Below the pieces are notes generated by a model that was not told the DNA's origin, made no database searches, and was given only the letters and a program-made list of their open reading frames with translations. A stretch of DNA of 63,847 nucleotides, the filler included, from Reticulomyxa filosa (Eukaryota; Protista; Foraminifera): the NCBI GenBank assembly GCA_000512085.1. It is 22 parts of 22 records of this genome, joined end to end, with 100 filler letters (N's around TTAATTAATTAA, not from the genome) between each part and the next. Parts side by side here need not be neighbours in the genome. Positions count along the whole stretch, not along the records: positions 1 to 4,180 come from ASPP01044832.1; 21 more parts are not named here. The stretch is one strand, 5' to 3'. Position 1 is the stretch's first letter. Each line of letters begins with the position of its first letter. Shown here one piece after another: positions 3-2,267 of this stretch. Both the position numbers and the translations under genes were made by a program.

Positions 3-2030
3 GGAAACAGAATTGTATCTGGTTCATGGGATACAACCATTCGACTGTGGGATTCATCTTCAGGAAAGCTAATTCGATCATTGAAAAGTTATTCAGCTGT
101 TGTTTTGTCTGTTCAATTTTCACCTGATGGAAACAGAATTATATCTAGTCTAAGTGATAATACCATTCGATTATGGGATTCATCATCAAAAGAATTAATT
201 CAATCATTGGAAAGTCATTCAGATGATGTCAGATCTGTTCACTTTTCACCAGATGGAAACAGAATTGTATCTGGCTCAGTTGATAAAACCATTCGATTAT
301 GGGATGCATCATCAGGAAAACTAATCCAATCATTAGAAGGTCATTTAGGTTGGGTTAATTCTGTTCAATTTTCACCTGATGGAAATAAAATTGTATCTGG
401 TTCACGGGTAAACACCATTCCATTGTGGAATGCATCATCAGGAGAATTAATTCAATCATTTGAAGGTCATTCAGGTGGTGTTTTTTCTGTTCAGTTTTCA
501 CCTGATGGAAACAGAATTGTATCTGGTTCAGCTGATGCTACCATTCGATTGTGGGATGCATCATCAGGAAGACTTATTCGATCATTGAATAATAGTTATT
601 ACAGCGTTTACTCTGTTCAATTTTCACCTGATGGAAACAAAATTGTATCTGGCTCAGATGATAAAACCATTCGGTTATGGGATGCAACATCAGGAAAACT
701 AATTCGAACATTTGAAAGTCATTCAAATGACGTTTGGTCTGTTCAATTTTCACCTGATGGAAACAAAATTGTATCTAGTTCAACTGACAAAACCATTCGA
801 TTATGGGATGTAACATCAGGAAAACTAATTCAATCATTGGAAGGCCATTTAGGTGGTGTTAACTCTGTTCAATTTTCACCTGATGGAAACAGAATTGTAT
901 CTGGTTCAGATGATAAAACTATTCGATTATGGGATGCATCATCAGGAAAGCTAATTCGATCATTGGAAGGTCTTCCAGATATCGTTTGCTCTGTTCAATT
1001 TTCACCTGATGGAAACAGAATCGTATCTGGTTCTGCTGATAAAACCATTCAATTATGGGATGCAACTTCAGGAAAGCTAATTTTATCATTGGAAGGTCAT
1101 CCAGATATCGTTTGCTCTGTTCAATTTTCACCTGATGGAAACAAAATCGTATCTGGTTCAGCTGATAAAACCATTCGATTGTGGGATGCAACATCAGGAA
1201 AACTAATCCAATCATTGGAAGGTCATTCAGAGCGCGTTAACTCTGTTCAGTTTTCACCTGATGGAAACAGAATTGTATCTGGTTCATGGGATACAACCAT
1301 TCGATTGTGGGATGCATCATCAGGAAAGCTAATTCAATCATTGGAAGGCCATTTAGGTAGTATTCTGTCCGTTGAATTTTCACCTGATGGACATAAAATT
1401 GTATCTGGTTCAGATGATACAACCATTCGATTATGGGATGTGTCAGCAGGAACACTAATTCGAACATTGGAAGGTCATTCAAAGGGTGTTAATTCTGTTC
1501 AATTTTCACATGATGGAAACAGAGTTGTATCTGGTTCAGCTGATAACACCATTAGATTGTGGGATGTAACATCAGGAAAACTAATTCAATCATTGGAAGG
1601 CCATTCAGATAGTGTTAAGTCTGTTCAATTTTCACCTGATGGAAATAAAATTGTATCTGGTTCAGAGGATAAGACCATTCGATTATGGGATGCAACATCA
1701 GGAAAGCTAATTCAATCATTGGAAGGTCATTCAAATAGTGTTAACTCTGTTCAATTTTCACCTGATGGAAACAGAATTGTATCTGGTTCAGAGGATAAAA
1801 TCATTCGGTTGTGGGATGTAACATCAGGAAAACTAATTCAATCATTGAAAGGTCATTTAAGTAGTGTTAACTCTGTTCAATTTTCACCTGATGGAAACAG
1901 AATTGTATCTGGTTCAGAGGATAACACCATTCGATTGTGGGATTCGTCATCAGGAAAATTAGTTCAATTATCGGATAGTCATTCAGGTAATGCTTTATCT
2001 GTGCAATTTTTATCTGATGGCAACAGAACT
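3..2030 (+). repeat. 126-bp tandem coding repeat (WD40 units)
   Basis: ctgttcaattttcacctgatggaaacagaattgtatctggttca recurs with a 126-nt period. Corresponding positions of two adjacent units fall at 961 and 1087. Confidence 0.95.
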
Positions 2031-2267
2031 GTGTCTGATTTGAACAATGTTGCGAACAAATTTGAGAATTTTAATAATTTAAGTTTGGATCGTTTTTCAG
2101 AAGATAGAAAATCTATGCAAAAGGAAAAGATCTCTTTGTGGAAATGCATTTGGCGAGGTGGTGTTGGAGGATTTGGTTTGTCATTGAAGGGAAGTATATG
2201 GAAAGATACTAACGGTATAACTGCATGGCAGCTGTCTCTTATTGAACATTATGGTGGAACTTTTTGA
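3..2267 (+). CDS. WD40-repeat protein with highly conserved internal repeats (HET-E/NWD-type sensor region), 5'-truncated
   Basis: The frame is open from position 3 ([17 protein letters not shown]...), so the ORF-track start at 81 is not the real start. About 16 complete 42-aa units of [42 protein letters not shown] plus one partial unit. No introns. Stop is TGA at 2265-2267. Confidence 0.93.
   Translation, partial: [754 protein letters not shown]

What the first reader, a model, noticed from the sequence alone, without database searches (positions are those of the whole stretch)
3..2267. HET-E/NWD-like hypervariable WD40 array: candidate NLR-type non-self recognition receptor in a protist
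Seen: the 126-bp units are nearly identical in DNA, yet variation concentrates at the same few codons in every unit. These are the three residues after GH plus the residue after V (SDDVR, LGWVN, SGGVF, YYSVY, SNDVW, PDIVC, SERVN, LGSIL, SKGVN, SDSVK) and the two x positions of SGS-x-D-x (V/K, A/A, D/K, W/T, E/N). Known: this pattern of concerted evolution with hypervariable top-face propeller positions characterises the fungal NACHT-WD40 (HET-D/HET-E/HET-R, NWD) allorecognition receptors of Podospora anserina. Inference: a reticulopodial, fusing protist may use a repeat-shuffling receptor family for self/non-self or pathogen sensing. The upstream part is outside the window, so no NACHT domain is seen here.
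Basis: partly seen in the sequence, partly recalled or inferred. Interest (0 to 1): 0.8.

Follow-up and report, generated by a model that had tools for sequence, protein, structure and literature searches.

The report
Hypervariable WD40 array of NACHT-family gene
The window holds the tail end of a Reticulomyxa filosa gene with at least 16 very similar WD40 repeats whose differences sit on the predicted binding face; its relatives carry a NACHT ATPase, so it is probably an NLR-like sensor, but nothing here shows what it senses.

Summary
Window 3..2267 (+) is a 5'-cut ORF. It has 16 in-register 126-bp WD40 units, a degenerate 17th unit and a conserved roughly 50-aa tail. Six of 42 codon columns (x-D-x after SGS; the three residues after GH; the residue after V) are hypervariable. 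With column 18 they carry 53% of nonsynonymous differences. Four of the six are the positively selected positions of Podospora HET-D/E repeats, and three are the known WD40 top-face hotspots. "Nearly identical DNA" is overstated: mean unit identity is 82.5% nt and 71.5% aa, below the 85% aa threshold used for fungal NLR repeats.

The NACHT cannot be seen because the piece ends inside the array. Tail-sharing paralogs are all R. filosa, and overlapping contig-cut paralogs tile to: unknown N-terminus, NACHT, helical linker, pentapeptide, WD40 array, tail. One paralog joins the NACHT Walker B to WD40 units of the window's type on a single contig.

dN at the hypervariable codons exceeds array-wide dS 2.2- to 3.3-fold, but not the dS of those same codons. 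Diversifying selection is therefore likely, not proven. No HET domain was found, and allorecognition is untested.

Verdict: a new member of a known kind, an NLR-like NACHT-WD40 in a foraminiferan.

The parts
3..2267 (+). 5'-truncated ORF (754 codons plus stop) cut by the piece edge: WD40 array plus C-terminal tail
   Evidence: Searches show an uninterrupted frame. One search finds only WD40/beta-propeller Pfam families.
3..2018 (+). 16 in-register 126-bp (42-codon) WD40 units. Hypervariable codons in each unit are columns 9 and 11 (SGS-x-D-x) and columns 31-33 and 35 (GH-xxx-V-x).
   Evidence: The AF2 model of 7 units (pLDDT 97.1) puts columns 9 and 11 in the B-C turn, 31-33 in the D-A loop, and 35 as the second residue of strand A.
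2019..2114 (+). Degenerate 17th unit (GNRTVSD...) and a low-conservation spacer
   Evidence: Paralogs P0121-P0123 degenerate at the same place.
2115..2264 (+). Conserved ~50-aa C-terminal tail (LWKCIW.GG...GLSLKGS.WKD..G.T..Q....E.YGG.F), found only in R. filosa WD40 proteins
   Evidence: phmmer against 1.84 billion representatives gives 7 R. filosa proteins, E 4e-14 to 2e-5. Alignment. No Pfam family.
2268..3822 (.). AT-rich (about 23% GC) spacer between two convergent genes
   Evidence: Only one mechanical ORF of 60 aa or more (3029..3274, minus strand, 81 aa, low-complexity), which was not followed up. No Rfam family or tRNA.

Best explanation
The window holds the 3' part of one member of a Reticulomyxa filosa multigene family of NLR-like STAND NTPases. 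Tiling of paralogs gives the architecture: an unannotated N-terminal region of about 210 aa, a NACHT domain, a helical linker, a short pentapeptide-repeat stretch, a long WD40 array, and a conserved C-terminal tail. The array (at least 16 blades, probably two or more propellers) is the likely sensor domain. Its framework is kept uniform within the gene, while the residues on the top, ligand-binding face differ from blade to blade, giving a composite and diversifiable binding surface. By analogy with Apaf-1, fungal NWD/HET-E and bacterial NACHT proteins, ligand binding to the propellers would release the NACHT for nucleotide-dependent oligomerisation and N-terminal signalling. Shown here: the array, the position-specific variability, its location on the top-face loops, the family architecture in paralogs, and purifying selection on the framework. 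Inferred: that this particular gene has the NACHT upstream, that the variability is driven by selection, and the activation mechanism.
For: (1) Array and variability pattern.
(2) Location on the propeller. The 7-unit AF2 model (pLDDT 97.1, pTM 0.93, 28 strands) places the hypervariable columns in the B-C turn, the D-A loop and the start of strand A. Columns 33, 35 and 9 are the R1-2, R1 and D-1 top-face hotspots of PMC3419727.
(3) Match to Podospora. Columns 33/35 and 9/11 equal Podospora codons 7/9 and 25/27.
(4) Family membership. The tail is shared only with R. filosa proteins. Tail-bearing P0123 also has the linker and pentapeptide stretch. That linker is 60-70% identical to R. filosa proteins with a NACHT above Pfam's cut-off: P0133, P0134 and P0136 score 40-41 bits against 26.7. 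These carry Walker A GKSGSGKS and Walker B FIMDGFDE.
(5) Physical linkage in a paralog. P0129 runs on one contig from Walker B through linker and pentapeptide into WD units of the window's type. It is 68% identical to P0134 over 395 aa. By local blastn, its WD DNA is 83-84% identical to window units.
(6) Selection. Framework dN/dS is 0.44. dN at the hypervariable codons is 0.87 against an array-wide dS of 0.26. A tree-free minimum-change count gives a ratio of 2.2, p about 9e-4.
(7) Within-array homogenisation. Non-hypervariable nt identity is 0.878 inside the array versus 0.78-0.84 to paralog units. Column 23 is Leu in all 16 window units but Gln in most paralog units listed. Identity does not decay with distance along the array.
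(8) Closest relatives. The closest sequence relatives of the array are STAND-, kinase- and caspase-linked bacterial and fungal WD40 proteins, and the closest solved structure is the highly repetitive Nostoc propeller 2YMU.
Against: The piece ends inside the array, so no NACHT is seen in this gene, and no single contig spans NACHT to tail. At least one tail-bearing copy (P0125, L003) has only about 170 bp to the upstream neighbour and cannot hold a NACHT. dN/dS at the hypervariable codons is only 1.2-1.4 and not significant when those codons' own synonymous changes are used. The array-wide dS may be depressed by 82% A/T third positions and by gene conversion. Units are only 82.5% nt and 71.5% aa identical, so turnover is slower than in Podospora. 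The N-terminal region of the family has no recognisable effector domain. There are no expression or population data.
Confidence: 0.7

Rival explanations
1. This is a STAND-less WD40 scaffold protein, or a truncated 3' copy of a family member. The variable loop positions simply reflect relaxed constraint on surface loops of a recently amplified ('highly repetitive') propeller.
For: P0125 is a short WD40-plus-tail gene with no room for a NACHT. P0126 is also short and begins inside a WD unit. Hu et al. 2017 report that highly repetitive WD40 proteins in bacteria, fungi and protists generally show conserved frameworks with diverse hotspot sites (PMC5587647). Within-site dN/dS at the hypervariable codons is not significantly above 1.
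Against: The window's WD units are closest in type to units physically joined to a NACHT in P0129. A 754-codon ORF stays intact in a 23-38% GC genome, and framework dN/dS is 0.44. dN at the hypervariable codons is 2-3 times the array-wide dS. P0125 is more divergent and looks like a decayed fragment, with a junk-like N-terminus.
Confidence: 0.17
2. This is a HET-E-like allorecognition receptor: the family decides compatibility when reticulopodial networks of different R. filosa genotypes fuse.
For: The positions of variability are the same as in Podospora het-d/het-e. The architecture is NACHT-WD40 in a multigene family. The organism is a fusing syncytial protist; this rests on general knowledge and was not tested.
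Against: No HET domain or any known death or effector domain was detected in the family's N-terminus. No polymorphism or repeat-number data exist. Identity between units is far lower than in Podospora, where it reaches 100%. Most NLR-like proteins sense pathogens or symbionts rather than conspecifics. No paper in the library links Reticulomyxa with NACHT or NLR function.
Confidence: 0.1
3. This is an assembly artefact: the 16-unit order is a collapsed or chimeric consensus of several paralogous arrays in a fragmented short-read assembly.
For: Every family contig fetched, except the short copy L003, ends inside or next to a WD array or at the gene edge. The window piece itself starts inside a repeat. 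Read-level checks were unavailable.
Against: Units differ by 8-28% in DNA, enough for unique placement. The frame is unbroken over 2.2 kb. All 16 units share array-private states, such as Leu at column 23, that paralog units lack. A mix of paralogs would not show this.
Confidence: 0.05

Closest known systems
Podospora anserina NWD/HNWD family (HET-D, HET-E, HET-R): HET/other-NACHT-WD40
   Same: NACHT plus a long array of 42-aa WD40 units in a multigene family. The framework is conserved at the DNA level. Variability is concentrated at the same four positions (x-V-x at the start of strand A, x-D-x in the B-C turn) on the propeller's interaction face.
   Different: Podospora units reach up to 100% identity within and between genes, against 82.5% nt here, and here units are more alike within than between genes. 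No HET domain was found. The R. filosa family has a pentapeptide stretch between NOD and WD40 and a conserved C-terminal tail, neither of which is described in the parts of the Podospora papers read here. Two further loop positions (columns 31, 32) also vary. Function is untested.
Bacterial (mostly cyanobacterial) HTH-NB-ARC/STAND-pentapeptide-WD40 proteins, and the highly repetitive Nostoc punctiforme propeller 2YMU
   Same: These are the best sequence matches of the array: 2YMU at E 2e-158, and the best whole-protein hits at 53-58% identity. They share the domain order NOD, pentapeptide, WD40, short C-terminal cap.
   Different: The NOD of the bacterial proteins scores best as NB-ARC, whereas the R. 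filosa NOD scores as NACHT. Linker and tail show no significant sequence similarity: BLASTP E about 1, and the tail HMM gives E above 1 against 120 proteins. Pattern scans of bacterial genomes and metagenomes found no relative of the linker.
Highly-Repetitive (HR) WD40 proteins as defined by Hu et al. 2017
   Same: Internal aa identity of 0.715 reaches their 0.7 cut-off. They describe a conserved framework with diverse hotspot sites, many repeats, and occurrence in bacteria, fungi and protists.
   Different: That catalogue is descriptive and not tied to STAND proteins. R. filosa was not found in the stored part of their list.
Apaf-1 (NB-ARC-WD40 apoptosome sensor)
   Same: A STAND NTPase with two C-terminal WD40 propellers acting as ligand sensor. 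Its WD40 region matches the window at E about 1e-76.
   Different: Apaf-1 blades are divergent single-copy units with no hypervariable or repetitive pattern. It has a CARD effector and an NB-ARC NOD.

Membership tests
WD40 beta-propeller (PF00400) | Tandem ~42-aa units with GH...WD signature that fold into four-stranded blades | tested here: met
   PF00400 in 15 stretches, E 3e-204. AF2 7-blade model with pLDDT 97.1. 2YMU at E 2e-158.
NLR-like STAND NTPase (NACHT + repeat sensor) | NACHT/NOD domain with Walker A and B on the same polypeptide, N-terminal to the repeats | tested here: inconclusive
   Not visible in the window because the ORF is cut at base 3. In paralogs, NACHT scores 40-41 bits against a cut-off of 26.7. 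P0129 links Walker B to WD40 on one contig. Tiling identities are 60-70%. One tail-bearing copy, P0125, lacks room for a NACHT.
NLR-like STAND NTPase (NACHT + repeat sensor) | C-terminal superstructure-forming repeat domain | tested here: met
   16 or more WD40 units.
NLR-like STAND NTPase (NACHT + repeat sensor) | Recognisable N-terminal effector or signalling domain | tested here: not met
   P0134 residues 1-215 give no Pfam family at E up to 10. PADLOC finds nothing for whole P0134. There is only a weak Atlas lead to bacterial NACHT N-terminal helical domains, score 0.92.
Fungal HNWD (HET-D/E/R) allorecognition genes | N-terminal HET domain | tested here: not met
   No HET domain or any other Pfam family in the N-terminus of paralog P0134. 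This gene's own N-terminus is unavailable.
Fungal HNWD (HET-D/E/R) allorecognition genes | High internal repeat conservation (at least 85% aa identity over at least 100 aa; Dyrka 2014) | tested here: not met
   Mean aa identity is 71.5%. Only 9 of 120 unit pairs reach 85%. Criterion from PMC4986451.
Fungal HNWD (HET-D/E/R) allorecognition genes | Variation focused on four top-face codons (x-V-x, x-D-x) | tested here: met
   Columns 33/35 and 9/11 are among the six most variable. They lie in or next to the D-A and B-C loops. They correspond to Podospora codons 7/9 and 25/27.
Fungal HNWD (HET-D/E/R) allorecognition genes | Positive diversifying selection (dN/dS above 1) at those codons | tested here: inconclusive
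   dN at the hypervariable codons over array-wide dS is 3.3 by pairwise counting. The minimum-change count gives 2.2, p 9e-4. With the same codons' own dS the ratio is 1.2-1.4, not significant.
Fungal HNWD (HET-D/E/R) allorecognition genes | Concerted evolution of repeats within and between paralogs | tested here: inconclusive
   Within-array homogenisation is supported: private Leu at column 23, identity 0.878 inside versus 0.78-0.84 between arrays, and no decay with distance. Exchange between loci is not shown, and recent intragenic amplification gives the same picture.
Fungal HNWD (HET-D/E/R) allorecognition genes | Allelic repeat-number polymorphism and a role in cell-fusion incompatibility | not testable with these tools
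Highly-Repetitive WD40 (Hu et al. 2017) | Internal repeat identity of at least 0.7 | tested here: met
   0.715 mean pairwise aa identity over 16 units. Cut-off from PMC5587647. Their exact averaging may differ.
Bacterial HTH-NB-ARC-pentapeptide-WD40-cap proteins | Detectable sequence homology outside the WD40 array (linker, pentapeptide, C-terminal cap) | tested here: not met
   BLASTP E 1.1 for the linker. No tail match. Tail HMM gives E above 1 against 120 proteins. The resemblance is in domain order only.

The most novel reading that the evidence does not exclude
Reticulomyxa filosa, a syncytial foraminiferan whose networks fuse, maintains an expanded NACHT-pentapeptide-WD40 family. In this reading the propeller faces are diversified by repeat homogenisation plus selection, forming a non-self (allorecognition, or virus/symbiont-sensing) repertoire that arose independently of the fungal HNWD system. 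That would be a third eukaryotic lineage converging on repeat-shuffled NLR-type receptors.
Probability: 0.15. Interest if true: 0.8.

Novelty: new member of a known kind. Interest (0 to 1): 0.5.

Why it matters
NLR-like receptors with rapidly diversifying repeat sensors are documented in animals, plants, fungi and some bacteria. For Rhizaria, no paper in the searchable library mentions Reticulomyxa together with NACHT. A foraminiferan family that shows the position-for-position variability pattern of Podospora het genes would extend this design to another eukaryotic supergroup. It would also give a concrete candidate gene set for asking how a giant fusing protist tells self from non-self, or detects parasites. 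The limits are real. The general pattern of a conserved framework with variable hotspots is already described for highly repetitive WD40 proteins, protist ones included (PMC5587647). The link to a NACHT is by paralog tiling only.

Tried and rejected
No upstream sequence, read support or expression could be obtained, and read laying was not attempted.
- An exact look-up of the 754-aa product found nothing.
- The whole-protein word search was swamped by 8000 generic WD40 hits, with no same-organism paralog in the top 120.
- The tail search restricted to proteins of 415-1320 aa found nothing. The unrestricted phmmer search was needed.
- The single-sequence AF2 model of all 754 aa was unusable (pLDDT 41). 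It was replaced by a 7-unit model with an alignment of shifted repeat windows plus homologues. The tool gives no coordinates, so face clustering was inferred from loop assignment and the published hotspot rule, not measured.
I therefore ran no tree-based SLAC/FEL-type site test and did not reconstruct ancestors by other means. Pairwise and minimum-change counts were used instead.
- A bacterial origin of the linker or tail is rejected for lack of support. BLASTP and HMM comparisons were not significant, and pattern scans of metagenome and prokaryotic genome contigs found no relatives.
- The N-terminal effector has no Pfam or PADLOC family, and no significant PDB sequence match was found for P0134. 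The Atlas lead to NNH1/NNH3 is too weak to use.
- P0127, a 1630-aa repetitive protein, is a spurious low-complexity hit to the tail.
- There are no Rfam families or tRNAs in the window.
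Full report
**1. What is in the window**

- Bases 3..2267 (+ strand, frame 3) form one uninterrupted reading frame of 754 codons plus a stop. The piece edge cuts it at the 5' end.
- Tandem Repeats Finder reports a single array at 1..2037, period 126, 16.2 copies, 83% matches.
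- Cut every 126 bases from base 3, the frame gives 16 ungapped 42-residue units. Their consensus is [42 protein letters not shown].
- A degenerate 17th unit and a non-WD tail follow.
- Pfam finds only WD40 and beta-propeller families (PF00400 in 15 stretches, E 3e-204).
- Downstream lies a 23% GC spacer (2268..3822), with no Rfam family or tRNA.
- Beyond the spacer is the 3' end of a second, convergent WD40 gene of a different repeat type (3823..4180, minus strand).

**2. The observation**

- Variability is strongly position-specific. Columns 9, 32, 33 and 35 carry 8 residue types each, columns 11 and 31 carry 4, and most other columns carry 1-3.
- Seven columns (those six plus column 18) hold 53% of all nonsynonymous differences while making up 17% of the unit.
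- Nucleotide identity between units is 50.6% at the six hypervariable codons and 87.8% elsewhere.
- "Nearly identical in DNA" is too strong. Mean pairwise identity is 82.5% (range 72-92%) for DNA and 71.5% for protein. Only 9 of 120 unit pairs reach 85% aa identity.

**3. Where the variable residues sit**

- A 7-unit segment was folded with an alignment of shifted repeat windows and homologues. It gave a confident propeller: pLDDT 97.1, pTM 0.93, 28 strands.
- In unit numbering, the strands are B = columns 3-8, C = 12-17, D = 23-28 and A = 34-39.
- Columns 9 and 11 therefore fill the B-C turn around the conserved Asp.
- Columns 31-33 lie in the D-A loop.
- Column 35 is the second residue of strand A.
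- By the rule of Wu et al. (PMC3419727), column 35 is R1, column 33 is R1-2 and column 9 is D-1. These are the three generic top-face interaction hotspots of WD40 blades.
- Paoletti et al. (PMC1805685) found four codons under strong positive selection in Podospora HET-D/E repeats. They are numbers 7 and 9, flanking a conserved site, and 25 and 27, flanking another, 18 codons apart.
- Those are exactly columns 33/35 (flanking Val34) and 9/11 (flanking Asp10).
- I could not obtain coordinates. Clustering on one face is inferred from loop identity and established WD40 topology, not measured.

**4. Selection**

- Framework columns are under purifying selection (dN/dS 0.44).
- At the six hypervariable columns dN is 0.87, against a dS of 0.26 for the whole array, a ratio of 3.3.
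- A tree-free minimum-change count gives 2.35 nonsynonymous changes per site there, against 1.06 synonymous changes per site array-wide. The ratio is 2.2, with conditional binomial p about 9e-4.
- With the same codons' own synonymous changes as denominator, the ratio is 1.2-1.4 and not significant.
- That denominator is small (3.6 sites). It is also inflated by convergent amino acids reached through different codon families.
- Conversely, the array-wide dS may be depressed by 82% A/T third positions and by homogenisation.
- Verdict: diversifying selection is likely but not demonstrated.

**5. Homogenisation**

- Unit identity shows no decay with distance along the array; it stays between 0.823 and 0.832 at every lag tested from 1 to 12.
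- Units are more alike inside this array than to in-register units of paralogous arrays. Non-hypervariable nt identity is 0.878 inside, against 0.78-0.84 to paralog units.
- All 16 window units have Leu at column 23, where most paralog units listed have Gln.
- This is the signature of within-array concerted evolution or of recent intragenic amplification. Exchange between loci, a hallmark of the Podospora family, is not shown.

**6. The missing upstream part**

- No genome, reads or earlier notes were available.
- The 82-aa tail has no Pfam family.
- A phmmer search of 1.84 billion representatives found it in seven other proteins. All are Reticulomyxa filosa, assembly GCA_000512085.1. This also confirms the organism.
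- The tail is well conserved across them (alignment).
- One of them, P0123 (ETO18853), runs from a contig edge through a helical linker and a pentapeptide-like stretch into WD40 units and the tail.
- Searching its first 235 residues returned only R. filosa proteins.
- Four of these hits continue into WD40 units (P0129-P0132). Pentapeptide PF00805 scores 28.2 bits against a cut-off of 20.2 in P0130.
- Three carry a NACHT above Pfam's gathering score: P0133, P0134 and P0136 at 40-41 bits against 26.7. They have Walker A GKSGSGKS and Walker B FIMDGFDE.
- P0129 spans, on one contig, Walker B, linker, pentapeptide and WD units reading [39 protein letters not shown], the window's repeat type.
- P0129 is 68% identical to P0134 over 395 residues. 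By local blastn, its WD DNA is 83-84% identical to window units, the same level as units within the window.
- The window's last units plus tail align to the P0123 contig at 73%.
- The family architecture is therefore: N-terminal region of about 210 aa, NACHT, linker, pentapeptide, WD40 array, tail.
- No contig spans all of it, because the fetched contigs that carry a long array of this type break inside or beside it.
- One tail-bearing copy (P0125, L003) has a neighbouring gene only about 170 bp upstream and a junk-like N-terminus. It is a short or decayed copy without a NACHT. The tail alone does not guarantee a NACHT.

**7. Relatives outside R. filosa**

- The array's best matches are bacterial and basidiomycete WD40 proteins fused to NACHT, NB-ARC, AAA, kinase or caspase domains, at 53-58% identity among the best whole-protein hits.
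- The best solved structure is the highly repetitive Nostoc punctiforme propeller 2YMU (E 2e-158). Designed WRAP/Tako8 propellers, Apaf-1 and WDR5 follow.
- Many of the bacterial hits have the order HTH, NB-ARC, pentapeptide, WD40, short C-terminal cap (...MNITG..GLTEAQK..L..LGA), parallel to the R. filosa order.
- Outside the WD40 array I found no significant sequence similarity: BLASTP E about 1, and the tail HMM gives E above 1.
- Pattern scans of metagenome and prokaryotic genome contigs found no relatives of the linker.
- The parallel is architectural only. A bacterial origin is neither supported nor excluded.

**8. N-terminal domain**

- The only paralog with an N-terminus (P0134) has no Pfam family there, HET included. 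It has no PADLOC family and no significant PDB sequence match.
- A language-model look-alike search points weakly to bacterial NACHT N-terminal helical domains (score 0.92 with a low feature count). This is a lead only.

**9. Comparison with what is known, and novelty**

- The gene works like, and probably is, an NLR-like NACHT-WD40 protein with a diversified propeller face.
- It is not a member of the fungal HNWD family in the strict sense. No HET domain was found. Internal conservation is below the 85% criterion (PMC4986451). Exchange between loci and allelic polymorphism are untested.
- It does meet the 0.7 cut-off for "Highly-Repetitive WD40" of Hu et al. 2017. They already noted variable hotspot sites on conserved frameworks in bacteria, fungi and protists. 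R. filosa is not in the stored part of their list.
- No paper in the library mentions Reticulomyxa together with NACHT. The single paper with Reticulomyxa and NLR is about cnidarian apoptosis.
- I rate it a new member of a known kind, of moderate interest.
- The allorecognition idea fits the organism's biology but rests on no evidence here.

Noticed in passing
window 3823-4180 (minus strand): The 3' end of a second, convergent WD40 gene of a different repeat type (for example ...SVEYSPFVIKNSIGNSNVICSGSLDNTIRFWD...). It is cut by the piece edge. Both ends of the piece fall in WD40 genes.
   Followed up: partly
window 2115-2264; P0121-P0126, P0128: A conserved ~50-aa C-terminal tail is specific to R. 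filosa WD40 proteins. By eye it resembles the ...MNITG..GLTEAQK..L..LGA cap that ends 19 of the 120 best bacterial STAND-WD40 hits. HMM and BLASTP comparisons were not significant.
   Followed up: yes
window units 8 and 9 (885-1136): Two adjacent units share the identical hypervariable set (PDIVC) and are the most similar pair (92% nt), which suggests a recent local duplication. Units 1 and 11 share SWDTT. Units 14-16 share SGSED.
   Followed up: partly
window, column 23 of all 16 units; paralogs: Leu is fixed at column 23 in every window unit, whereas most units of paralogous genes have Gln. This is an array-private state that fits within-gene homogenisation.
   Followed up: yes
L003 1557-2530 (P0125, ETO35862): A short WD40-plus-tail gene model has a hydrophobic junk-like N-terminus and a neighbouring gene about 170 bp upstream. 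It is probably a truncated or decayed family copy or a wrong gene model.
   Followed up: partly
L002 1625-3252 (minus strand): The contig carrying tail-only fragment P0124 also holds a separate 489-aa WD40 gene and a PPR gene. WD40 genes appear very abundant in this genome.
   Followed up: no
P0134 residues 1-215 (R. filosa RFI_38148): The family's N-terminal region has no Pfam or PADLOC family. There is a weak Atlas resemblance to bacterial NACHT N-terminal helical domains (NNH1/NNH3). It is a possible new effector or signalling domain.
   Followed up: partly
window units 1, 2, 4, 5, 16: Several blades have lost parts of the GH / S-x-D / WD signature (SY for GH in unit 1, SSLSD in unit 2, [10 protein letters not shown] in unit 4, NNSYYS in unit 5). 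Degenerate blades lie mostly toward the two ends of the array.
   Followed up: no
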